Virus record (IMG/VR): IMGVR_UViG_3300048591_000147
Span: 1-64,000 of that record
Length of the DNA stretch: 64,000 bases
Strand: one strand, 5' to 3'
The number at the start of each line of letters is the position of its first letter. Position 1 is the first letter of the stretch. A program made the translations under genes and the position numbers. The notes under the pieces were generated by a model. It did not search any database, was not told the DNA's origin, and was given only the letters and a program-made list of their open reading frames with translations. Below are positions 1 to 48,806 of the stretch, piece by piece.

Positions 1-130
1 TTACTCCAACAGTTACTCCAACAGTTACTCCAACAGTTACTCCAACAGTTACTCCAACAGTTACTCCAACAGTTACTCCAACAGTTACTCCAACAGTTAC
101 TCCAACAGTTACTCCAACAGTTACTCCAAC
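1..130 (+). repeat. Perfect 12-nt tandem repeat (GTTACTCCAACA, about 10.8 copies) encoding VTPT
   Basis: Read directly from the sequence; in frame with ORF 168..773 and truncated by the window edge. Confidence 0.95.
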
Positions 131-10801: not shown

Positions 10802-11587
10802 TCAATTTGGTGGAATATCCATTGTGTCTGCGTCAAACAATGTTTTATATGGTGGATCTTCTCTTGTAACGTCAGTCACTTTTTCCCAAATATCGTCTTG
10901 AGTTCGTATAGTATCCAATCGCAGTTTGATGGATTTTATGAAATTCTGTTTGATGTTGACTGGTGGGCTTAAATAAAACTGCACTCTGAAATTTAATGAT
11001 GTAACTATGACCCGCTTATCAGCGAGTTTTGGGTAATTTTTGTTAAAATCTACATTAACTAGCTCTACGCTAGTGATTTTCGTCAAGTCGTGAAAGTCGT
11101 CAGAAGTTTGAATTTGTAATACAGGATCAAAGATCATTAATATCTGTTCTAATATCTGTAAATGTTGGTCTTCATTACTACAATACATTGAAAGCTCAAA
11201 TAATCCGTCATATGGTATTGGTTGAGCTTGATAGACTACTTTTATGTCATCTGGTAACGATCCGCCCGCTGGTAGCACGCTATGGCGCATGAAAGTTCCG
11301 ACACCTTTTCTTCTAGATGGTACTTGTTCCATTCCGGCAAAATCAGCCGCGAACATGGGCAATCGTATAGGTTTATTTTGTGTATTCTCAGAAAGAATTG
11401 CATCCACTATTCGACTAGAATTACCATACCGGATAGGCACATACATTAGATTCTTAGTAGAATTGAAATTGTTTTTTCCAACAGATACTTGCAGCCCGGA
11501 AAATATGGCCATGAATTGTATTATATAGCTTCTGATTTGTTCGTCATAGAAATAGGTATCTAAGTCTTTCTTGAAATCATTATCCAT
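10802..11587 (-). CDS. Tail sheath stabiliser/completion protein, T4 gp15-like
   Basis: YFYDEQIRSYIIQF..IFS, VPIRYG, LPM, P.PYD..FELSMY, LQILEQIL..FDP pattern. Confidence 0.75.
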   Translation of the reverse strand: MDNDFKKDLDTYFYDEQIRSYIIQFMAIFSGLQVSVGKNNFNSTKNLMYVPIRYGNSSRIVDAILSENTQNKPIRLPMFAADFAGMEQVPSRRKGVGTFMRHSVLPAGGSLPDDIKVVYQAQPIPYDGLFELSMYCSNEDQHLQILEQILMIFDPVLQIQTSDDFHDLTKITSVELVNVDFNKNYPKLADKRVIVTSLNFRVQFYLSPPVNIKQNFIKSIKLRLDTIRTQDDIWEKVTDVTREDPPYKTLFDADTMDIPPN

Positions 11588-11949: not shown

Positions 11950-12843
11950 TTACTCCCAGATTAACCCGAAATAATCGCGCCATGACATATTATTTTCAAG
12001 CACAATAAATGTTTTTGGTGTAACACCAAGAGTAGTGCAGGTAAATGTTGTTCCTAGTGTTAAACCATCAGTTGATGACAATGATACTACGTTAGATAAC
12101 GGCTGTATTAGTGGCATTGCACAATAATGTCGTGCCACCTGATAATCACCCGGAACACCAGCATGAATAGTCCCTGACGTACCGAGAAGACCGGGCATGA
12201 ATGCATATGCGTTACATCCAAAAATCCCAACATCAGTAGATGACCAAGTGTATCCAGTGGTAAATTCATATGTTGTGACTGAGGGACACACAGTGACAGT
12301 AGCTACATAAACGACAACGCCCTGTGCGGTAGGTGTTCCAGAACTGTCTACTGTACGATGTATTACAAGCCCAGAAACAGCTCCAGATGTAAAAACTACA
12401 TTACACTTTAATGCAAACCATACACACCCTTCTACCATACACGCATAAGTTTGTTTGGCCAGAACTGTAGAATCAAGAACGAATTGAGAAGAATAACATT
12501 GAACACGCGCCACGAATATACCTGTGATGGTGCCGCTTCCATTAGAACCAGTACCCACAGTTATCCATATTGATGGATATGTATGAACAACACCATTACC
12601 ATATTCTATTTTAACATAAATTGGTGCAGTGCCGTGTAATGAATCATTTAAATATCTTATTTCATATCCAGCAGCGGTATCAGTCGATCCTGATTTGTTT
12701 ACAGACGCCCAGTTTATTTGACCAGTGTCTGCGGATTTAATGAATCCTACCGCTGTTAAAGCATTTGAAAACGCCAACCCCCATGCTCTGAAGTTAGCAG
12801 TTGCTGCATGTGAAATTAATGTTGTATAATTATTTGTTGCCAT
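11950..12843 (-). CDS. Putative tail/fibre-associated protein, paralog of 1388..2299
   Basis: Motif similarity as above. Confidence 0.6.
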   Translation of the reverse strand: MATNNYTTLISHAATANFRAWGLAFSNALTAVGFIKSADTGQINWASVNKSGSTDTAAGYEIRYLNDSLHGTAPIYVKIEYGNGVVHTYPSIWITVGTGSNGSGTITGIFVARVQCYSSQFVLDSTVLAKQTYACMVEGCVWFALKCNVVFTSGAVSGLVIHRTVDSSGTPTAQGVVVYVATVTVCPSVTTYEFTTGYTWSSTDVGIFGCNAYAFMPGLLGTSGTIHAGVPGDYQVARHYCAMPLIQPLSNVVSLSSTDGLTLGTTFTCTTLGVTPKTFIVLENNMSWRDYFGLIWE

Positions 12844-14908: not shown

Positions 14909-15858
14909 CTGTTTATCAATACTTGGTCAGTGATGTCAACGAATATGCTATTACTGTCTACTATAAAACCTATTCTCTGCATCGAGTACTCATTTGGTAC
15001 GGTAGTGGTTATTTCACCATTTTTCCCAACGAAAACTGTGGTCATTGGCGGTTCACTCCAATTCCAAGAGTTCGGATTTGATATCTTACCAAATTTTATA
15101 AATCTTACTACTTCACCGTTTGAATATGGTGCCAGTGAAACGCCTACACATTGTCGTGTGATATCCGTGCTGGATGCTACACCTAATTTGTTATAGTCCT
15201 TATAACATACACAATAATTTGCTGGGATCGTTTCTATAGCCTTAGCAGTGATTGCATGGCCCTCGGCTTTAGTGGATTGATCTAAAGCGTTCTGGTAGCT
15301 AATAAATGATTCAGTAGTTAAGAACGCACCACTACCAAATTTGTCTAATCTTTTAACAGGTTTTCCAGCATCATCAAATAAGATCTGGCCAGAGTAATTA
15401 CTTTGATTCAGTCCAACTGTAGAGCCGACAGAATATGCATTAACAATCGAACCGCTTTGTAAGTATCCTACAAATAAACGAACCTTATCTACCCAGCGAT
15501 TTCCAACCCTAACCTGCATGACTTTAGTCTTTAAATTAAAGAAGTGCTGGTCAGCGACTGGCGAAGCTGGTATTGTTGACCCGTATGTTGGTGCTACTGT
15601 CGTGTAACCAAAAGTTCTAACTCCAGTAGGAATGTCAATATCTATATAAAGATAATAGTTGTTGCTGCTTGGGAATGACCCAGTCCATGCGGTTAGGTTG
15701 GTTTCTGATTCTACTAATAGGTAATTATGGTTACCGTGGGCAAAAGTTCCGATGAATGGGGTAGAATCACAAATCAAACGAACATTATTACCAACTTTTG
15801 ATAAAAAAGATGGACTTGTTTGGACTTGAACTAGACCTTGGCGAAAAGATAATAACAT
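14905..15858 (-). CDS. Putative virion structural protein
   Basis: First gene of the minus-strand module; C-terminus similar to 834..1370. Confidence 0.55.
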   Translation of the reverse strand: MLLSFRQGLVQVQTSPSFLSKVGNNVRLICDSTPFIGTFAHGNHNYLLVESETNLTAWTGSFPSSNNYYLYIDIDIPTGVRTFGYTTVAPTYGSTIPASPVADQHFFNLKTKVMQVRVGNRWVDKVRLFVGYLQSGSIVNAYSVGSTVGLNQSNYSGQILFDDAGKPVKRLDKFGSGAFLTTESFISYQNALDQSTKAEGHAITAKAIETIPANYCVCYKDYNKLGVASSTDITRQCVGVSLAPYSNGEVVRFIKFGKISNPNSWNWSEPPMTTVFVGKNGEITTTVPNEYSMQRIGFIVDSNSIFVDITDQVLINR

Positions 15859-16187: not shown

Positions 16188-16258
16188 GATTGCACCAACC
16201 TTTCAAATAATATGTCTATTTATCGTTATAAATAGTTGAAAATAGATAGGTAAAATAC

Positions 16259-19042: not shown

Positions 19043-19954
19043 TCAGAAGGGTGGTAGTTTTTTCAATAATTCTATATAATTGTCTTTTTGAGGGTCATTA
19101 TTTTTAACCCCATCAATCCACATAGTTACCATTTCTGGAGTTGGTGGCTCAGGTTCTGGTAATTTTTCTACAGGTTCCGCAAATGGATTATATGGACAGT
19201 AGAATGCACCAGCATCTGTTTCTATTTGACATTTATACATAATTGGACCATCAATATTTTTTCTAGGTTCTTTTCTACTGAACTTCTGTTCTAGTGCCAT
19301 AATCAGATCTGTCATGTTGGCTGCGTATAGGCCCGCCGCGTTGAGCGTGTTAATTTCGACGATCTTAATACCGTCTGGCGTTTCGCAAACATCTATCACG
19401 TATGCCTCATGTGGTTGCCAGTCTCTACGATAAGAACAGCACAGGTTGTAAACGAAATTGTCAAATCGTTTATCAACGTCAGATGAGTAATGCACCGTGC
19501 CTCCACGTTTATACATGGATTTCGTTACAATTTTTCTATCTACTATCCAGTACCTATACTCCGCGTAGATTTCTTTAACAGGGCATACTTGGATTAATGT
19601 ATCACCGTTCATAGAAGAACCATAGTCATCACCCATCGTGAGAATACTATGTTGCCAATCTGTAAGCTCTTGATCCGTAAAGACTTTTCCAGCAAATACC
19701 TTGGAATCTTCAATTGGACGAAGGAATGCCGTTCCTGTTACAATCTTGGCATCAGCAAATCTCGACACAACAGCATCAGCATTGAGCATATATGAGCCCC
19801 AATGCTTCATCTGCTCATTGAAATTGACTGGCTCTAGATCGAACACACCGGGATACCAACCTTTCTTTCTTGCAATATGACGCATGGAATAAGATCCCAT
19901 GCATATTACATTAAGTAATAAATAAGAAAAAAGATTCAGTCGAATGACAATCAT
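19043..19954 (-). CDS. ATP-grasp protein (DUF4343/R2K-like), possibly N-terminally truncated
   Basis: F.RP..DSK.FAG, EYRYWIVD, YVIDV..T..G.KIVEIN..AAG.YAA. Confidence 0.7.
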   Translation of the reverse strand: MIVIRLNLFSYLLLNVICMGSYSMRHIARKKGWYPGVFDLEPVNFNEQMKHWGSYMLNADAVVSRFADAKIVTGTAFLRPIEDSKVFAGKVFTDQELTDWQHSILTMGDDYGSSMNGDTLIQVCPVKEIYAEYRYWIVDRKIVTKSMYKRGGTVHYSSDVDKRFDNFVYNLCCSYRRDWQPHEAYVIDVCETPDGIKIVEINTLNAAGLYAANMTDLIMALEQKFSRKEPRKNIDGPIMYKCQIETDAGAFYCPYNPFAEPVEKLPEPEPPTPEMVTMWIDGVKNNDPQKDNYIELLKKLPPF

Positions 19955-20008
19955 GGGTTATCTCCTTATACGATAAAACCCCCATAACCGTCGATAAACT
20001 TACTGAAT
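19934..20008 (+). ncRNA. Y-RNA-like element A (minimal)
   Basis: ATTCAGT-CGAA...CTT-ACTGAAT terminal helix with bulged C; inner ATGGGTT/AAccCCCAT stem; TTATC. Confidence 0.65.
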
Positions 20009-20736
20009 TATATGTGTCTAGGTGCCAGAATGGTATTGGGTTGCGCTGCAAACGCAAATTGCGGGGGTTCGATTCCCTCCCTAGACTCCAAATCTTTAAC
20101 CTTGGCAATCCAGTTTTTAACTTTTTGCCTTTTCATACCCAAAAGGTTGGCGACTTTGGTCACCCAACCATATTTTGTAAAATCTATACCAGATTCGTTT
20201 AGTAATGTTATACGTTCTTGCTGTGATTTAAACCACTCGTTTAAGTGAGTCGCCAACCATTCTTTTCTTTCTTTCTTCTGCGGTTTGATTAATGCCGTTT
20301 TTTTATTTTTAGAACAGTAGTTGGTAGTCTGAGTATGACAATTTGGACACAGCAATCTAAGATTTTCAAATCTGTTATCATCATTTAGACCGTTGATATG
20401 ATCTAATTGTAAAGTTAATGGTAAATTATTATGCGTTCCGGTATTTGCGCATAATGCACACGAGTAATTTGTTAATTCAATAAACCTAGCTTTGACCCTT
20501 TTTCTAGGGACTTCGCAACCTGTAGTAAATAATTCATCATCTGTGTAGTATCTCTTTAAGGCGGTCATATCTCTGCATTTAAAATGTGAAATATCTAAAT
20601 TATATTGTTTTATATATTTGGATAAGGTTCTATAACCTCCACCAGACGTTGAGTTGCAACCCATTTTTGCAATTGCTTCTCTTTTACTTAAACTATTTTG
20701 AATTATTGATTTAATTTCTTCTGCTTTTGTTTCCAT
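20008..20736 (-). CDS. HNH homing endonuclease
   Basis: CALC..LQLDHINGLNDDNRFENLRLLCPNCH; own TATAAATA box in a hairpin at 20742..20787 (minus strand). Confidence 0.9.
   Translation of the reverse strand: METKAEEIKSIIQNSLSKREAIAKMGCNSTSGGGYRTLSKYIKQYNLDISHFKCRDMTALKRYYTDDELFTTGCEVPRKRVKARFIELTNYSCALCANTGTHNNLPLTLQLDHINGLNDDNRFENLRLLCPNCHTQTTNYCSKNKKTALIKPQKKERKEWLATHLNEWFKSQQERITLLNESGIDFTKYGWVTKVANLLGMKRQKVKNWIAKVKDLESREGIEPPQFAFAAQPNTILAPRHI
20016..20090 (+). tRNA. tRNA-Cys(GCA)
   Basis: Full cloverleaf: GTCTAGG/CCTAGAC, TTGCG-CTGCAAA-CGCAA, U73, encoded CCA. Confidence 0.92.
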
Positions 20737-20840
20737 GATTAGATGAACCCCTGTTGTTAATTGTATTTATAATAACTGTAGTTCATCCTCAAATTTGACA
20801 GATACGAATTGGTGTGTTAACATGCTTCACATGAGATCAG

Positions 20841-20868
20841 GGGAGTTCGACTCTCTCACGAGACTCCA
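20841..20868 (+). pseudogene. Orphan tRNA 3' half (T arm, acceptor 3' strand, CCA)
   Basis: GGGAG-TTCGACT-CTCTC-ACGAGAC-T-CCA with no matching 5' acceptor strand upstream. Confidence 0.5.
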
Positions 20869-20876
20869 AATAGAAT

Positions 20877-21010
20877 TACTAGTCGAATTGTAAAGGGTTA
20901 TCGCATTCGGAGCGGCTGATATTGGTTCGATTCCAGTGTGTTCCATACAGAGGGACACTAGCTTAATGGATAAAAGCAGCTAAAACATCCTTTCTTAATA
21001 CTTACTAGTA
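20877..21010 (+). ncRNA. Y-RNA-like element B with circularly permuted tRNA domain (YrlA-like)
   Basis: TACTAGT-CGAA...CTT-ACTAGTA; T arm ATTGG-TTCGATT-CCAGT, acceptor GTGTTCC/GGGACAC, then D arm GCTT..AAAGC. Confidence 0.8.
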
Positions 21011-21040
21011 TATTAATTTATGTCATAATGAGGAAGCAGC

Positions 21041-21988
21041 ATGGAATGTTACATGGTAGCAAGAAATCCATCAGGTGGAGATTATCTAGTCATGGATTAT
21101 TCATCCTTCGTTAGACAAGGTGGTAACGACCAATCATGGGGTAAGTGTTGGGTAACAATTTACGCTCGCTCCGCGAGTGAAGCTAGAGCTAAGGCATATC
21201 AATACTTATGAAAGTTAATATCAAATTAGAAATTGTCCCATTTACGGTGCCGGATGACGTTGCTTTAAAAGGACCACCAGCACTTAGACAAGATGGATTT
21301 AAACCATTGCAAAGATATCCGCTATCAGCCTTAGACTATGATAGTTTGTCAGAATTATGTTCTAACTTTAGAAAAGAAATTTTCAAAAAGGCTGGAATCA
21401 TTGATCAACAAAATCATAATCCGTATCGCAGTTATGATTCGAATGGTGATCTTGAGGGTGGAAAATGACAGACAGATTTCATAGTTTTACAGTGGTTTTA
21501 AAAGAACCGATTCGCGAAGATGACGCAGAAGCATTGATGAATGCCATTAAATGCTTGAAAGGTGTAATTGATGTAGCTGGTAATGTTGCGGATGCTAACG
21601 CATATGTGGCATACTCCAGAGCACGCAGCGAGCTTCGTGATAAATTATGGGATGCACTGAAATGACATCCACAATGGAAAGATTAAAAAAACATCTGGTA
21701 GCGGACAGGCAGAAGAGATTAGATGATCTAAGTGAACAAGATAATACGTTCTTTGATTTGACGAAAACTTCGGCTGAAAGATTTTTAAACAGAGTTAATG
21801 CGCAATTAGATCAAAGATGTCAAGTGATGGAAGCTATATTGCTTAGTCCAACATTTTCCAATGATGACAACAATCAGGAATATATTAACTGTAGCTTGTT
21901 GTTGGATAAGTATGAGAGTTTAATAAAACTTCTTCAACGAGATGATCTACTTGACATACTGGAAAAATGCGGTACAATAGAAGAATAA
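21041..21988 (+). CDS. Four small hypothetical proteins (21041..21211, 21208..21468, 21465..21665, 21647..21988)
   Basis: Overlapping start/stop codons. Confidence 0.55.
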
Positions 21989-21993
21989 AGAAT

Positions 21994-22153
21994 ATTGGTC
22001 GAACGATAAAAGGTTATCTCATTATCAGGGGCTGTAGGAAAGGTTCGAGTCCTTTCTCTTTTCACCAGAATGTAATTTGTGAAGATTATATCCATGTGAA
22101 AAGATGCGCTAGCGGCTGGCGGGCAAAAACATCTTTTTCATTAACTTACCAAT
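21994..22153 (+). ncRNA. Y-RNA-like element C with permuted tRNA domain
   Basis: ATTGGT-CGAA...CTT-ACCAAT; T arm AAAGG-TTCGAGT-CCTTT; acceptor-like TCTTTTCAC/GTGAAAAGA; upstream TTGACA..TACAAT promoter. Confidence 0.8.
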
Positions 22154-22215
22154 TAATTAACAAAGTAGTTGACAGCAAGAATAATACGCAGTAGAATGTA
22201 CTAAATAAAGAGAAC

Positions 22216-22375
22216 ATTGGTCGAACTATAAAAGGTTACCACGTAAAGGGGATGTAGGAATGGTTTAAGTCCATTCGCTTTCCACCAAAATGTAATTTGA
22301 GAAGATTGCATTTCTATGGAAAGCTAGGCGAGGGTCCAGCCGTCCAAAAAAGTCTTTTGTAATAAACTTACCAAT
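22216..22375 (+). ncRNA. Y-RNA-like element D (close paralog of C)
   Basis: ATTGGT-CGAA...CTT-ACCAAT; acceptor-like GCTTTCCA/TGGAAAGC; promoter TTGACA(22169)-17-TAGAAT. Confidence 0.8.
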
Positions 22376-22398
22376 TAATGTATAAATAGAATAAAAAT

Positions 22399-22511
22399 GT
22401 TGGTCGTTGATAGAAGTTTATCCGATAATCGTCCTAAGTAGAATGAAATAGTTCTGGATCTGGTAGATCTGATGATAAGAAAAATTACTTTTATTGTTAC
22501 ACCTTACCAAC
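22399..22511 (+). ncRNA. Y-RNA-like element E
   Basis: GTTGGT-CG...CTT-ACCAAC; TTTATC; preceded by TATAAATA at 22381. Confidence 0.65.
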
Positions 22512-22523
22512 GAAAATTAAAAT

Positions 22524-22661
22524 TGTTTAAGTCGAAAATGTAAAGGTTATCACAAACAGTCGTATGTGGGTTCGAGTCCCACCATTGCTGGAAGCAGTAA
22601 TAGTAGGCAAATTGGTTTAGCCAACCGTCAAAAACATCTTTCATTATTACTTACTTGAACA
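22524..22661 (+). ncRNA. Y-RNA-like element F with permuted tRNA domain
   Basis: TGTTTAAGT-CGAA...CTT-ACTTGAACA; T arm GTGGG-TTCGAGT-CCCAC; loop-closed acceptor ATTGCTG-GAAG-CAGTAAT; D arm GGC-AAATTGGTTTA-GCC. Confidence 0.8.
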
Positions 22662-22677
22662 TATAATTAGAATAAAA

Positions 22678-22785
22678 TTGTCAGTCGATTTGTAGAAGAT
22701 TATCTTTCGTGAAAAAGGAAATATGGGTTCGACTCCCATCTCGGGCTTGGTGCTATCAAACTCTTTTACTATAACTTATTGACAA
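22678..22785 (+). ncRNA. Y-RNA-like element G
   Basis: TTGTCAGT-CGA...CTT-ATTGACAA; T arm ATGGG-TTCGACT-CCCAT. Confidence 0.72.
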
Positions 22786-22800
22786 ACATATAAATAGAAT

Positions 22801-22881
22801 TTGTAGTCGATCTGCTAAGAATTATCTTTCAAATGGTGAAGTGGGCTAGGCCCATAATTTCTTGCTAATAACTTACTACAA
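22801..22881 (+). ncRNA. Y-RNA-like element H (minimal)
   Basis: TTGTAGT-CGA...CTT-ACTACAA; TTATC; preceded by TATAAATA at 22789. Confidence 0.7.
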
Positions 22882-22892
22882 TAATTTTGAAT

Positions 22893-23001
22893 TTATCAGT
22901 CGATAAATGATCATTATCACTCCGCCAAAACTTGGAGATTAGATGGTTCGAATCCATCACTAGCGTCGGTTCGCACTTGGTCGTTGACAACTTACTGGTA
23001 A
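22893..23001 (+). ncRNA. Y-RNA-like element I
   Basis: TTATCAGT-CGA...CTT-ACTGGTAA; T arm GATGG-TTCGAAT-CCATC. Confidence 0.72.
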
Positions 23002-23010
23002 TATATATTT

Positions 23011-23102
23011 GGATAGGTGTTCGAGCGGTTTAAGAAACTTGCCTTGAAAGCAAGAGATCCACCTAAAAACTGGGTCCGTGGGTTCGAATCCCACTCTATC
23101 CT
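23011..23102 (+). tRNA. tRNA-Ser(TGA)
   Basis: CTTGC-CTTGAAA-GCAAG, long variable arm, GTGGG-TTCGAAT-CCCAC; CCA not encoded. Confidence 0.88.
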
Positions 23103-23157
23103 CAGTTTTGTGTCCCCACATAAATAGATAAAGACTATTTAATGTGGGAACATAAGC

Positions 23158-23778
23158 ATGTATTATACGATATATCTAGTAACTAATACTATTAATGGTA
23201 ATGTTTACATAGGTAAACATCAAACGAATGATTTAAACGATGGCTATATGGGATCTGGTAAGATCCTTAAAAATGCCATTAAAAAATATGGACTTTGTAG
23301 TTTTCAAAAAACAATTTTACACATATTTGAAAACGAACAAGAGATGAATAAAAAAGAAGCAGAATTAGTAAATGAAGAGTTTATAGTACGAAAGGATACT
23401 TATAATATCTGTGTCGGTGGTTGTGGTGGATTTGGTTATATAAATAAAAATTTACCGAATGGTATGCTTGGTAAAAAGCAAACCGATTTCCAGAAACAAA
23501 GAGTGTCAGAGTGGCATGAGAAAAACAAACATCTTGTTGATAAAAACAAACACTCTGAAATGATTAAAAATGGATTGAAAAAAATGCTCAAACCTTCCGA
23601 TGGCTTTACAGGAAGGACACATACAGAAGATACCAAAAATAAAATGTGCAAGCCTAAAAATATTGGTGAAAGTAATTCACAGTTTGGTAGTATGTGGATA
23701 ACAGATGGTATAAATAGTATTAAAATAAAGAAGACAGATCTTATTCCAGAAGGATGGTATAAAGGTCGTAAAACGTGA
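23158..23778 (+). CDS. GIY-YIG homing endonuclease (Seg-like)
   Basis: TIYLVTNTING.VYIGKH..Y.GSG..LK.AIKKYG; upstream CATAAATA within hairpin 23111..23152. Confidence 0.9.
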   Translation: MYYTIYLVTNTINGNVYIGKHQTNDLNDGYMGSGKILKNAIKKYGLCSFQKTILHIFENEQEMNKKEAELVNEEFIVRKDTYNICVGGCGGFGYINKNLPNGMLGKKQTDFQKQRVSEWHEKNKHLVDKNKHSEMIKNGLKKMLKPSDGFTGRTHTEDTKNKMCKPKNIGESNSQFGSMWITDGINSIKIKKTDLIPEGWYKGRKT

Positions 23779-23966
23779 AAATGTTTTCTTTTTGGCGTGT
23801 CGTGTTACTGTTTAGTTGGGCTAAAGATGGACTTTGGTTCACTAGACGAAAAGATGGTGACAATGAGAAGCACTTAATAAGTTTTTGTTTTGTAGATAGA
23901 AAAGAAGGTCGCGTGTATACATTCATATGTTGGCGCTTCATGATTAAATTAGGTATTGTATAATTT

Positions 23967-24094
23967 TCACAGTCGATTAATCTGGTTTACCTTGGAGAAA
24001 CGTCCGACCTAAAAATCGGGTGCGAGTCTGGTTCAAACCCGGACAAAATAGCGAAAGCTATGCTGTATAAAACCATTTTAGCAACTTATTGTGA
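23967..24094 (+). ncRNA. Y-RNA-like element J
   Basis: TCACAGT-CGA...CTT-ATTGTGA; TGGTTT/AAACCA stem; TTACC; T-arm-like GTCTGG-TTCAAAC-CCGGAC. Confidence 0.7.
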
Positions 24095-24102
24095 TTTATA
24101 AG

Positions 24103-24128
24103 AAAAGGCCAGCGAAAGCTGGCCTTTT
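24103..24128. terminator. Bidirectional Rho-independent terminator
   Basis: AAAAGGCCAGC-GAAA-GCTGGCCTTTT. Confidence 0.9.
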
Positions 24129-24137
24129 TGTTTGCGC

Positions 24138-35366: not shown

Positions 35367-35479
35367 TGGATCGTCACCCAGTGGACGAAGGTAGCGGGCT
35401 CTTAAAATACTTTTACGAGAGTATTTTGAAACCCGATTGCGAAAGCACAACGTGGGTTCGAATCCCACCGATCCAACCA
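35367..35479 (+). tRNA. Second copy of the long-V-arm tRNA-Lys, anticodon CTT, with a 26-nt hairpin insertion in the anticodon loop
   Basis: Identical to 34337..34423 outside the anticodon loop; insert 35403..35428. Confidence 0.85.
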
Positions 35480-48531: not shown

Positions 48532-48653
48532 TGGCATGTAGCTTAGAGGCAGAGCGAGTGACTGTGGAAGGAAACGTCAAGGCGTTGATCAGTTCGAATC
48601 TGATAACTTCAAAAGTAATCACTAGGTCGTAGGTTCGATCCCTACCTTGCCAG
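48532..48653 (+). tRNA. tRNA (Asn-like body) interrupted by a 50-nt structured insert in the anticodon loop
   Basis: AGTGA-CTGT[48566..48615]TAA-TCACT; G73; removing 50 nt gives a standard 72-nt tRNA-Asn(GTT). Confidence 0.8.
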
Positions 48654-48667
48654 CATAAAATTTAAAT

Positions 48668-48806
48668 GTCTCTTTGGCCGAGTGGACTATGGCAACAGGC
48701 TGTGGGTGTAAGAGTAAAGGCTCTGATCAGTTCGAATCTGAAATCACCGAAAGTAACCTGTCAGATGAAAATCTAATCACTGGTTCGAATCCAGTAGGGG
48801 ACTCCA
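48668..48806 (+). tRNA. Long-V-arm tRNA interrupted by a homologous 50-nt insert
   Basis: ACAGG-CTGT[48704..48753]TAA-CCTGT; 17-nt V arm; U73; CCA. Confidence 0.78.

What the first reader, a model, noticed from the sequence alone, without database searches (positions are those of the whole stretch)
19934..24094. Family of ten phage-encoded Y-RNA-like genes, seven in a tandem array
Seen: ten elements (19934, 20877, 21994, 22216, 22399, 22524, 22678, 22801, 22893, 23967) share a bipartite frame. A variable 6-9 bp terminal helix ends in 5'-GTCG(A)...CTTA(C/T)-3', giving G-C, U-A, bulged C, G-U, A-U. A second A/G-rich stem, usually with a 1-2 nt bulge, follows, then TTATC or TTACC. The terminal helices differ in sequence but pair in every copy (ATTCAGT/ACTGAAT, TACTAGT/ACTAGTA, TTGTAGT/ACTACAA and so on), which is covariation. 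Established: a bulged-C helix of this form is the Ro60/Rsr-binding site of Y RNAs, UUAUC is conserved in Y/stem-bulge RNAs, and bacterial YrlA RNAs carry tRNA-like domains. Inference: an expanded, diversified Y RNA repertoire, expressed from its own early (21951, 22169) and late (22381, 22789) promoters, that could sponge or retarget a host or phage Ro60, or tether different nucleases. No Ro60 gene is visible in this window.
Basis: partly seen in the sequence, partly recalled or inferred. Interest (0 to 1): 0.92.

Follow-up and report, generated by a model that had tools for sequence, protein, structure and literature searches.

The report
Ten phage Y-RNA-like genes, no Ro60 nearby
A 315-kb T4-like jumbo phage carries ten small RNA genes of the bacterial/phage Y RNA (YrlA/YrlB) kind inside its tRNA cluster; the RNA type is already known from phages, but here there are ten copies and no gene for their usual partner protein Ro60 anywhere in the 128 kb read around them.

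Summary
Ten elements share one frame on the + strand between 19933 and 24094. Dinucleotide shuffles of the window give 0.125 such matches on average. Both stems pair only with their own partner strand.

The Y-RNA reading is supported by association, not by binding data. In 80 viral loci fetched only through their Ro60/Rsr protein, the frame occurs 21 times on the Rsr strand and never on the other (0.4 expected). A covariance model built from non-window elements, six of the eight Rsr-adjacent, matches e2, e6 and e7 at 45-46 bits and e3 at 27 bits. It also finds the Y RNA pair upstream of Ro in mycobacteriophage Catera. e2 and e6 have the full permuted tRNA-like domain of YrlA. e1, e5 and e8 lack a T-arm; e1 and e8 resemble the short forms found beside Rsr.

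Rfam's YrlA and Y_RNA models do not hit the window. No Rsr was found in the window, in 64-74 kb or in 261-315 kb of the circular contig; 74-261 kb is unread.

Phage Y RNAs beside Ro60 have been published since 2014. What differs here is the tRNA-cluster setting, the separate early-type and late-type promoters, and the distance from any Ro60.

The parts
19933..20009 (+). e1, short Y-RNA-like element (77 nt, no T-arm); it ends 6 nt before tRNA-Cys
   Evidence: Frame scan. Second-best window hit of the short-form model R2, 13.7 bits. An orthologue is kept in relative L003.
20877..21010 (+). e2, full YrlA-like element with T-arm, 7-bp acceptor-like hairpin and D-arm
   Evidence: R1 45.2 bits, E 1.6e-11, full-length match. 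Aligns with Rsr-adjacent YrlAs. Sub-threshold Rfam tRNA hit of 22.5 bits.
21994..22153 (+). e3, 160-nt element with a T-arm and a long acceptor-like hairpin
   Evidence: R1 27.1 bits, E 3e-6. A TTGACA-16-TACAAT promoter-like site ends at 21978.
22216..22375 (+). e4, paralogue of e3 with a degenerate T-loop
   Evidence: R1 14.1 bits, E 0.02. A TTGACA-17-TAGAAT site ends at 22197. MFE z -2.76.
22398..22512 (+). e5, element with the frame only (GTCGT variant) and two internal hairpins
   Evidence: Frame scan. 9-bp second stem. Not recognised by R1 or R2.
22524..22661 (+). e6, full YrlA-like element with T-arm, 7-bp acceptor-like stem closed by GAAG, and D-arm
   Evidence: R1 45.8 bits, E 1.1e-11. 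Its L003 orthologue shows compensatory changes in the acceptor-like stem.
22678..22785 (+). e7, element with a T-arm and one further hairpin, no D-arm
   Evidence: R1 46.0 bits, E 9.3e-12. The T-stem changes A-U to G-C in the L003 orthologue.
22801..22881 (+). e8, short element (81 nt) with one GC hairpin
   Evidence: Best window hit of the short-form model R2, 19.1 bits, E 0.02 over the whole window. A TATAAATA box lies at 22789.
22893..23001 (+). e9, element with a V hairpin, T-arm and one further hairpin; it ends 9 nt before tRNA-Ser
   Evidence: R1 11.7 bits. Compensatory changes in the T-stem, the V hairpin and the second stem against L003.
23967..24094 (+). e10, element with a divergent T-like hairpin, followed by a terminator
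   Evidence: Frame scan. 85% identical orthologue sits directly after tRNA-Ser in L003. Not recognised by R1 or R2.
20016..20090 (+). tRNA-Cys(GCA), abutting e1
   Evidence: ARAGORN and Rfam.
23011..23103 (+). tRNA-Ser(UGA), abutting e9
   Evidence: ARAGORN and Rfam.
21951..21978 (+). sigma-70-type promoter-like site in front of e3
   Evidence: 11 of 12 consensus matches.
22169..22197 (+). sigma-70-type promoter-like site in front of e4; the homologous site drives e6 in L003
   Evidence: 11 of 12 matches. L003 sequence.
20795..20823 (+). sigma-70-type promoter-like site upstream of the tRNA-Cys fragment and e2
   Evidence: 10 of 12 matches with an extended TG.
22381..22388 (+). TATAAATA box (T4 late-promoter type) in front of e5
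   Evidence: The same box precedes ORFs at 16227, 18152, 33410 and 62220.
22789..22796 (+). TATAAATA box in front of e8
24103..24133 (+). intrinsic-terminator-like hairpin (GGCCAGC-GAAA-GCTGGCC followed by a T run) closing the unit after e10
   Evidence: Read from the sequence. Weak Rfam hits to terminator-bearing sRNAs lie here. The scan tool did not list it, perhaps because part of the T run can pair into the stem.

Best explanation
The ten elements are genes for small non-coding RNAs of the bacterial/phage Y RNA class: YrlA-like forms carrying a permuted tRNA-like domain, and short YrlB-like forms without it.

Each RNA closes its 5' and 3' ends into a copy-specific helix. That helix ends in the conserved G-C, U-A, bulged C, G-U, A-U module, followed by a second stem and the motif GUUAYC. 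This is the part that, in known Y RNAs, docks on the outer face of the ring protein Ro60/Rsr. The far end is a variable effector module: a full T/acceptor-like/D-arm tRNA mimic in e2 and e6, a T-arm plus hairpins in e3, e4, e7, e9 and e10, and a plain loop or hairpin in e1, e5 and e8.

The genes sit in the tRNA cluster. They are probably transcribed with the tRNAs from early-type (sigma-70-like) and late-type (TATAAATA) promoters and cut out of multi-gene precursors.

Inferred function: they bind an Rsr protein, either encoded elsewhere in the phage genome or supplied by the host. They would then gate its cavity and tether it to tRNA-recognising or exonucleolytic partners such as PNPase, with different modules recruiting different partners or acting at different times of infection.

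Shown here: the frame, the pairing, conservation under compensatory change, and the statistical link of this frame to Rsr genes. Inferred: transcription, processing, Rsr binding and the downstream activity.
For: 1. The frame is real and partner-specific.

2. Orthologues in a related 307-kb phage contig (L003) keep both stems and the conserved motifs almost unchanged while loops drift. Compensatory changes occur in the T-stems (e7 A-U to G-C, e9 A-U to U-A), the V hairpin, the acceptor-like stem and the second stem.

3. The invariant G-U in the core and the single orientation argue for RNA rather than DNA structure.

4. A DNA pattern taken from the window found 101 viral loci, about 40 of which carry a TROVE + vWA_Ro60 gene within a few kb.

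5. In 80 loci fetched by Rsr protein alone, the window's frame regex hits 21 times on the Rsr strand, 0 on the other, against 0.4 in shuffles.

6. Model R1, built from non-window elements, scores e7, e6 and e2 at 45-46 bits and e3 at 27 bits, all full length, while true tRNAs match only the T-arm at about 16 bits.

7. R1 gives 103 hits in the Rsr loci, all on the Rsr strand and flanking the gene. It finds a long and a short element just upstream of Ro in mycobacteriophage Catera.

8. The short-form model R2, built from 23 Rsr-adjacent RNAs (84.9% of cells paired against 62.5% in shuffles, 0/500; the U-A to C-G switch next to the bulged C occurs 13:10), ranks e8, e1 and e7 as its top three hits in the window.

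9. Nine of the ten carry GUCGA and five of those read GUCGAA, which fits the published YrlA motif GNCGAA (PMC4201824).

10. In Streptomyces phage EGole, which has a Ro-like gene, four unannotated elements of this family lie in the tRNA cluster, three of them beside tRNA genes, as e1 and e9 do here.
Against: Rfam's curated YrlA (RF02553) and Y_RNA models give no hit in the region even at E up to 10.

No Rsr gene lies in the window, in 64-74 kb or in 261-315 kb of the circular contig. This rests on tblastn, an HMM with working positive controls, and precomputed Pfam tables. Every Rsr-linked relative I examined has its Y RNAs within about 10 kb of Rsr.

e5 and e10 are not recognised by either model, and e1, e4, e8 and e9 only weakly.

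R1's training sequences were found with a pattern derived from the window, so R1's scores on the window are partly circular. The independent evidence is their adjacency to Rsr and the tests on protein-fetched loci.

There is no expression or binding data. The terminal helix next to the core is A-U rich here, whereas Rsr-adjacent relatives have GGG/CC(C).
Confidence: 0.75

Rival explanations
1. The RNAs are Y-like in shape but work without Ro60. They would act as tRNA mimics that soak up or redirect host tRNA-binding enzymes or tRNA-targeting defence nucleases, or they would serve another role, as nematode stem-bulge RNAs do without binding Ro.
For: No Rsr in the 128 kb read around the array. 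T-arms and acceptor-like stems are kept under compensatory change. The phage invests in tRNA and RNA repair, with a Thg1-like gene and two RNA-ligase paralogues. There is precedent: C. elegans has 18 stem-bulge RNAs that share UUAUC and were not found in immunoprecipitates of its Ro60 orthologue (PMC4726728).
Against: The most conserved part is the Ro-docking module, not the tRNA-like part, and three elements have no tRNA-like part at all. No anticodon arm is present, so they cannot be decoys for anticodon nucleases. The frame is tightly linked to Rsr elsewhere. 187 kb of the genome and the host remain unexamined.
Confidence: 0.15
2. They are cis-acting punctuation of the tRNA operon: stable hairpins that guide RNase cleavage or protect neighbouring tRNAs, with no function as free RNAs.
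For: They abut tRNA genes with 6-16 nt spacers and lie in polycistronic arrangement. The same abutment is seen in EGole.
Against: e3 and e4 each have a sigma-70-type site and e5 and e8 a TATAAATA box directly upstream, and the four run on into further elements before the next tRNA. Sequence motifs (GUCGA, GUUAYC, CUUAY) are conserved far beyond what a processing hairpin needs and are shared with Rsr-linked RNAs across phyla.
Confidence: 0.05
3. They are decayed or rearranged tRNA genes, or tRNA pseudogenes, left by homing-endonuclease traffic in the tRNA cluster.
For: T-arm and D-arm sequences resemble tRNA. Rfam's tRNA model gives sub-threshold hits to e2 and e7. HNH and GIY-YIG endonuclease genes and a tRNA-Cys fragment lie among them.
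Against: ARAGORN finds no tRNA in any element. The arm order is permuted and the anticodon arm is missing. A non-tRNA frame is shared by all ten, including three with no tRNA-like sequence. Structure is maintained by compensatory substitutions between related phages.
Confidence: 0.03
4. They are DNA-level repeats, such as miniature inverted-repeat elements or recombination or endonuclease target sites.
For: They have terminal inverted repeats and variable copy number between relatives (10 against 6).
Against: The inverted repeats differ between copies while pairing is kept. Invariant G-U pairs would be A-C mismatches on the other strand. All copies face one way. There are no target-site duplications. 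The relatives sit on the Rsr coding strand only.
Confidence: 0.02

Closest known systems
YrlA / YrlB, bacterial and phage Y RNAs (Chen et al. 2014, PMC4201824; Rfam RF02553)
   Same: Closed 5'/3' stem, the GNCGA(A) motif near the 5' end, and a permuted tRNA-like domain in the order V, T-arm, acceptor-like stem, D-arm in e2 and e6. Shorter companions lack it, and there are several genes per locus. A model built from Rsr-adjacent members matches four window elements strongly and finds the Y RNA pair upstream of Ro in mycobacteriophage Catera.
   Different: Not adjacent to any Rsr gene within 128 kb. There are ten copies. The outer helix next to the core is A-U rich. Early-type and late-type promoter-like sites lie in front of individual copies. 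Below detection for RF02553.
Thermus phage phiLo Yrl1/Yrl2 with phage Ro60 (PMC12135203)
   Same: Phage-encoded Y-like RNAs with a CGAA-type motif in a stem-bulge-stem fold. In that paper they bind the phage Ro60 and assemble with host PNPase, which is the mechanism proposed here.
   Different: phiLo has two RNAs directly upstream of its Ro60 gene. Here ten RNAs have no Ro60 gene in reach. I made no sequence comparison with phiLo.
Metazoan Y RNAs and nematode stem-bulge RNAs
   Same: A bulged-C helix in the terminal stem, a UUAUC motif and modular architecture. Nematodes carry a large paralogous family, most of which were not found bound to Ro (PMC4726728).
   Different: The core helix is one base pair shorter (GUCGA against GGUCCGA). 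There is no Rfam Y_RNA hit. [quoted passage not shown]
T4 species 1 and species 2 RNAs (rnaC, rnaD)
   Same: Small stable RNAs of unknown function embedded in a T4-type tRNA cluster next to a Seg homing endonuclease gene.
   Different: They do not have the frame (read) and are not hit by R1.
Y-like arrays next to Rsr in uncultured viral contigs (for example L166)
   Same: Same frame, a mix of long and short forms, tandem spacing and interspersed tRNAs. L166 gives 14 model hits upstream of Rsr.
   Different: Those arrays touch the Rsr gene and are GC-richer.

Membership tests
YrlA/YrlB bacterial-phage Y RNA | The 5' and 3' ends pair into a terminal stem | tested here: met
   All ten. The own-partner permutation test gives 0/20000.
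YrlA/YrlB bacterial-phage Y RNA | GNCGAA(N0-1)G motif near the 5' end (PMC4201824) | tested here: met
   GUCGA in 9 of 10, GUCGAA in 5 of 10, and e5 has GUCGU. In Rsr-adjacent relatives the N covaries with its partner, U-A 13 to C-G 10.
YrlA/YrlB bacterial-phage Y RNA | tRNA-like domain with T-arm, acceptor-like stem-loop and D-arm in that order (YrlA proper) | tested here: inconclusive
   Complete in e2 and e6, each with a 7-bp acceptor-like stem. e3, e4, e7, e9 and e10 have a T-arm only or a degenerate one. Absent in e1, e5 and e8, which resemble the short forms.
YrlA/YrlB bacterial-phage Y RNA | Encoded next to a Ro60/Rsr (TROVE + vWA) gene | tested here: not met
   None in the window, in 64-74 kb or in 261-315 kb of the contig. 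The HMM detects the positive controls Catera and EGole at E of 1e-198 or lower. 74-261 kb was not read.
YrlA/YrlB bacterial-phage Y RNA | Reaches the Rfam RF02553 gathering score (69 bits) | tested here: not met
   No RF02553 hit at E up to 10. As a control, Ro-adjacent elements in Catera, L166 and L102 also stay below it at 33-46 bits, so the model is narrow.
YrlA/YrlB bacterial-phage Y RNA | Significant match to a structure-sequence model of Rsr-linked members | tested here: met
   R1: e7 46.0, e6 45.8, e2 45.2, e3 27.1, e4 14.1 and e9 11.7 bits. R2: e8 19.1 and e1 13.7 bits. e5 and e10 are not matched. R1's seed choice is partly circular, as explained in the report.
YrlA/YrlB bacterial-phage Y RNA | Physically bound by Rsr | not testable with these tools
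   Needs a pull-down or gel shift.
Metazoan Y RNA (RF00019) | GGUCCGA/UUGAC bulged-C helix and a model match | tested here: not met
   The core here is GUCGA/CUUAY, one pair shorter. No Y_RNA hit.
tRNA | Cloverleaf with an anticodon arm, detectable by ARAGORN or Rfam RF00005 | tested here: not met
   ARAGORN finds none in the elements. RF00005 gives 22.5 bits for e2 and 17.6 bits for e7, against a gathering score of 29.
T4 rnaC/rnaD | Similarity to T4 species 1 and 2 RNAs | tested here: not met
   The frame is absent in the T4 sequence. No R1 hit on the T4 locus.

The most novel reading that the evidence does not exclude
The phage has no Ro60 gene at all and keeps a ten-member, temporally staged Y RNA family. 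These RNAs either capture the host's Rsr-PNPase machinery or act without Ro, making them a prokaryotic-virus counterpart of the nematode stem-bulge RNA expansion.
Probability: 0.25. Interest if true: 0.75.

Novelty: new variant of a known kind. Interest (0 to 1): 0.58.

Why it matters
Y RNAs are understood as partners of Ro60, and the few studied bacteria and phages have two to four of them beside the Ro60 gene. This window shows a jumbo phage that has multiplied and diversified them to ten, against six in a close relative. It places them among its tRNAs, gives some of them early-type and others late-type promoter-like sites, and keeps them at least 50 kb from any Ro60 gene.

If the phage lacks Ro60, it would be a natural test of whether Y RNAs can work through a host protein or without Ro. 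If it has one, the set of different end modules is a ready-made panel for asking what each module tethers.

The side results also matter. Many viral contigs carry unannotated arrays of these RNAs, isolated Streptomyces phages carry them unannotated beside tRNA genes, and Rfam's YrlA model misses most of them. Phage small-RNA annotation is therefore incomplete for this family.

Tried and rejected
- Rfam at gathering threshold and at E up to 10 gave no Y_RNA or YrlA hit in the region.
- Megablast and blastn of the region against 50,697 phage records found no homologue of the elements. The hits were to the Seg endonuclease gene and one 31-nt T-arm match in Aeromonas phage phiAS5, which lies in an unannotated tRNA-like stretch (my reading of the sequence).
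- T4 rnaC/rnaD as relatives: rejected.
- MAFFT plus RNAalifold on the ten elements or on the seeds recovered only the terminal helix and the T-arm, because lengths differ. I therefore tested the second stem with anchored segments instead.
- The hunt for Rsr on the contig had several parts. A single-protein search with a low-GC jumbo-contig Rsr found only itself. Walking by exact-protein look-ups covered 64-74 and 261-315 kb without a TROVE hit. A 564-aa ORFan near the RNA ligases shows no Ro-like signal by HMM, hhalign or PHROGs.
- The phiAS5 'RNA-binding protein' (DUF2828/DUF7788/vWA) has no counterpart in the window or in the fetched loci.
By my own estimate most of those matches are chance at that database size, and 20 of 120 loci carried Rsr, so it gave no host clue.
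- The model R1 hits in the pattern-fetched loci L001-L101 are not counted as independent evidence, because the pattern alone guarantees a good score.

Full report
**Setting.** The window is the first 64 kb of a 314,956-bp metagenomic contig: JGI sample 3300048591, Ga0498929_0000056, which is IMG/VR UViG_3300048591_000147. A near-identical 314,913-bp contig comes from a sister sample. Both ends of the contig lie in the same 12-nt tandem repeat, so the map is effectively circular.

The phage is a T4-type jumbo myovirus. It has a T4 gp15-like tail protein, TATAAATA boxes in front of ORFs, many homing endonucleases, and at least 9 tRNAs in the window. It has no close relative among 50,697 deposited phage genomes. 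A related 306,759-bp viral contig (L003) shares the locus at 75-85% identity.

**Observation.** All are on the + strand and nothing else in the window matches. Dinucleotide shuffles give 0.125 on average.

Anchoring on GTCG and CTTAY shows a common plan:
- a copy-specific outer helix;
- GUCGA;
- 2-4 nt;
- a purine-rich 5' strand of a second stem;
- UUAUC or UUACC;
- a variable interior;
- an A-rich run;
- the 3' strand of the second stem;
- 3-5 nt;
- CUUAY;
- the outer helix.

Each outer 5' strand pairs with its own 3' strand (mean 5.3 contiguous pairs beyond the core) and not with those of the other copies (mean 1.9). The second stem is 7-9 bp in every copy. Both are partner-specific in permutation tests, 0 of 20000 each. 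MFE z-scores are modest, with a mean of -1.7. The case therefore rests on conservation and pairing, not on thermodynamic stability.

**Interior modules.** e2 and e6 align along their whole length with Rsr-adjacent RNAs from other phages. The aligned parts are a V hairpin, a T-arm with GGUUCGAnUCC, a 7-bp hairpin in the place of the acceptor stem, and a D-arm with the GG loop. This is the permuted tRNA mimic described for YrlA (PMC4201824).

e3 and e4 are 160-nt paralogues with a T-arm and a long acceptor-like hairpin. e7 and e9 keep the T-arm, and e10 has a divergent one. e1, e5 and e8 have only a loop or simple hairpins. e1 and e8 resemble the 62-84-nt forms found next to Rsr elsewhere.

**Conservation.** L003 carries orthologues of e1, e6, e7, e8, e9 and e10. 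The two stems, GUCGA, UUAUC and CUUAY are almost invariant, while loops change.

Stems change by compensation:
- the e7 T-stem goes from A-U to G-C;
- the e9 T-stem goes from A-U to U-A;
- the e9 V hairpin goes from CUCC/GGAG to UCCC/GGGA;
- several pairs change in the e6 acceptor-like stem;
- the second stems of e8 and e9 change A-U to G-C and make G-U transitions.

L003 lacks e2-e5, the HNH gene and the Seg gene. Copy number is therefore fluid: six against ten.

**Link to Ro60/Rsr.** A pattern taken from the window (GTCGA, GGTTATC and GGTTCGA with gaps) found 101 viral loci. About 40 of them encode a protein with TROVE and vWA_Ro60 domains within a few kb.

This selection starts from the window, so I made an independent test. 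Eighty viral loci were fetched through an alignment of Rsr proteins alone. In them the window's frame regex occurs 21 times on the Rsr coding strand and never on the other, against 0.4 in shuffles.

Model R1 was built from eight non-window elements. Six of them are adjacent to Rsr; two were not checked. It gives 103 hits in the Rsr loci, all on the Rsr strand and directly flanking the gene, with up to 14 per locus.

R1 also finds a long form (58 bits) and a short form (24 bits) immediately upstream of the Ro gene of mycobacteriophage Catera. Mycobacteriophages are among the phages named for published YrlA.

In the window R1 matches e7, e6 and e2 at 45-46 bits and e3 at 27 bits over the full model. 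It matches e4 and e9 weakly. True tRNAs match only in the T-arm, at about 16 bits. R1's scores on the window are partly circular, because its seeds were found with a window-derived pattern. The Rsr adjacency of those seeds, and the behaviour on protein-fetched loci, are not circular.

A second model, R2, was built from 23 short Rsr-adjacent RNAs. In that alignment 84.9% of cells are paired, against 62.5% in shuffles. The pair next to the bulged C switches between U-A and C-G (13:10), and the C itself is invariant. R2 ranks e8, e1 and e7 as its top three hits in the whole window, though at weak scores of 19.1, 13.7 and 11.9 bits.

**Against membership.** Rfam has a YrlA family (RF02553, gathering score 69 bits). 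It does not hit the window even at E up to 10. It also stays below threshold, at 33-46 bits, on Ro-adjacent elements of Catera, L166 and L102. It is therefore a narrow model rather than a decisive negative. e5 and e10 are members only through the frame they share with their paralogues.

**The missing partner.** No Rsr is encoded in the window by tblastn or by an HMM of 13 phage Rsr proteins. Precomputed Pfam tables and the same HMM show none in 64-74 kb or in 261-315 kb. The HMM detects Catera and EGole Ro at E of 1e-198 or lower, and even the distant vWA protein of phage phiAS5 at 1.7e-7. On the circular map there is thus no Rsr within about 75 kb on one side and 50 kb on the other. The stretch 74-261 kb could not be read with the caps available.

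For comparison, Streptomyces phage EGole has a Ro-like gene. There, four unannotated members lie in its tRNA cluster from 0.8 to 10 kb upstream of it, three of them beside tRNA genes. Scattering among tRNAs is therefore a family habit. A gap of 50 kb or more is not something I saw elsewhere.

**Expression signals.** All of these are consensus matches only.
- Strong sigma-70-type sites end at 21978, 16 nt before e3, and at 22197, 19 nt before e4. A weaker one ends at 20823, upstream of e2.
- The site before e4 is homologous to the one that sits directly before e6 in L003.
- TATAAATA boxes, which elsewhere in the window precede ORFs, lie 9 nt before e5 and 4 nt before e8.
- Spacers of 11-16 nt separate e5 through e9. 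e1 and e9 run into tRNA-Cys and tRNA-Ser. A GC hairpin with a T run follows e10.

This fits multi-gene precursors that are cut up like tRNA operons, with both early and late transcription.

**Mechanism proposed.** By analogy with Deinococcus, Salmonella and Thermus phage phiLo, the terminal module docks on Ro60/Rsr and the distal module tethers a partner such as PNPase (PMC4201824, PMC12135203). Different distal modules and promoter classes would then give different complexes at different times. The 7-bp acceptor-like stems of e2 and e6 are the feature that made M. smegmatis YrlA an RNase P substrate (PMC4201824). The far end of the genome holds a Thg1-like gene, two RNA-ligase paralogues and NAD-salvage genes, so the phage has an RNA-repair toolkit. 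All of this paragraph is inference.

**Novelty.** Phage Y RNAs beside Ro60 are published, in mycobacteriophages, CcrColossus, phage G and phiLo (PMC4201824, PMC12135203). A TROVE protein with a tRNA-like partner is noted for a subset of jumbo phages (PMC7824862). My literature searches did not surface a ten-member set inside a T4-type tRNA cluster, with its own early and late promoter-like sites, mixed long and short forms, and no Ro60 within 50 kb. The two main Y RNA reviews could not be read. I rate it a new variant of a known kind.

Noticed in passing
window 20008-20871: An HNH endonuclease gene (20008-20736, minus strand) overlaps the 3' part of tRNA-Cys on the other strand. It is followed by a 33-nt fragment (20839-20871) that is 97% identical to the 3' end of the intact tRNA-Cys of relative L003, which has no HNH gene. 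This looks like an endonuclease insertion that replaced or duplicated the tRNA.
   Followed up: partly
window 23158-23778: A Seg-like GIY-YIG homing endonuclease gene sits between tRNA-Ser and e10. In L003, e10 follows tRNA-Ser directly. This mirrors segB in the T4 tRNA cluster.
   Followed up: partly
window 35367-35476, 48532-48653, about 48670-48805; L187 5650-6050: tRNA genes with long insertions that contain a second T-arm-like hairpin (GATCAGTTCGAATCTGAT). Two of them (35367-35476, 48532-48653) are called by Rfam but not by ARAGORN; the third I read by eye. Similar odd tRNAs occur in Aeromonas phage phiAS5.
   Followed up: no
window 1-130 and L191 6487-6594: Both contig ends lie in a 12-nt tandem repeat (TTACTCCAACAG, read in frame as a Thr-Pro-Thr-Val repeat) inside a gene of at least 463 aa. 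The assembly broke there in two independent samples, so the genome map is circular or permuted.
   Followed up: partly
L192, L193, L194, L196 (contig about 270-305 kb): A cluster of RNA-repair, NAD-salvage and counter-defence genes: a Thg1-like protein, two PF09414 RNA-ligase paralogues, NMNAT-NUDIX, NAMPT, NADAR, PhoH, Acb1 (anti-CBASS family) and a Tad2-like protein (anti-Thoeris family).
   Followed up: no
L166 686-2981: A 74-kb viral contig has 14 model hits of Y-like elements in tandem upstream of Rsr. One frame (1218-1353) encloses a sequence that scores 56.8 bits as tRNA (1263-1323).
   Followed up: partly
L197 (Streptomyces phage EGole, MK494112) 10989-11078, 12565-12721, 15555-15703, 20485-20599: Four Y-like elements lie in unannotated intergenic DNA of an isolated phage. 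Three are directly beside tRNA genes and one is 0.8 kb upstream of the Ro-like gene.
   Followed up: partly
alignments A3 and A4: GUUAYC just after the second stem is nearly invariant in the 31 sequences of A3 and A4, all but two of them confirmed Rsr-adjacent, and in the window. UUAUC is also the motif reported as conserved in nematode stem-bulge RNAs and vertebrate Y RNAs (PMC4726728). I did not test whether this reflects shared ancestry or convergence.
   Followed up: no
L187 1894-3327: Aeromonas phage phiAS5 encodes a 477-aa 'RNA-binding protein' with DUF2828, DUF7788 and vWA domains. It scores weakly (E 1.7e-7) against the Rsr HMM and may be a distant Ro-like family in T4-type phages. No Y-like element was found in the 12 kb around it.
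   Followed up: partly
Rfam RF02553: The curated YrlA model leaves Ro-adjacent elements of mycobacteriophage Catera and of two viral contigs at 33-46 bits, below its 69-bit gathering score. Routine annotation will therefore miss most phage members.
   Followed up: partly
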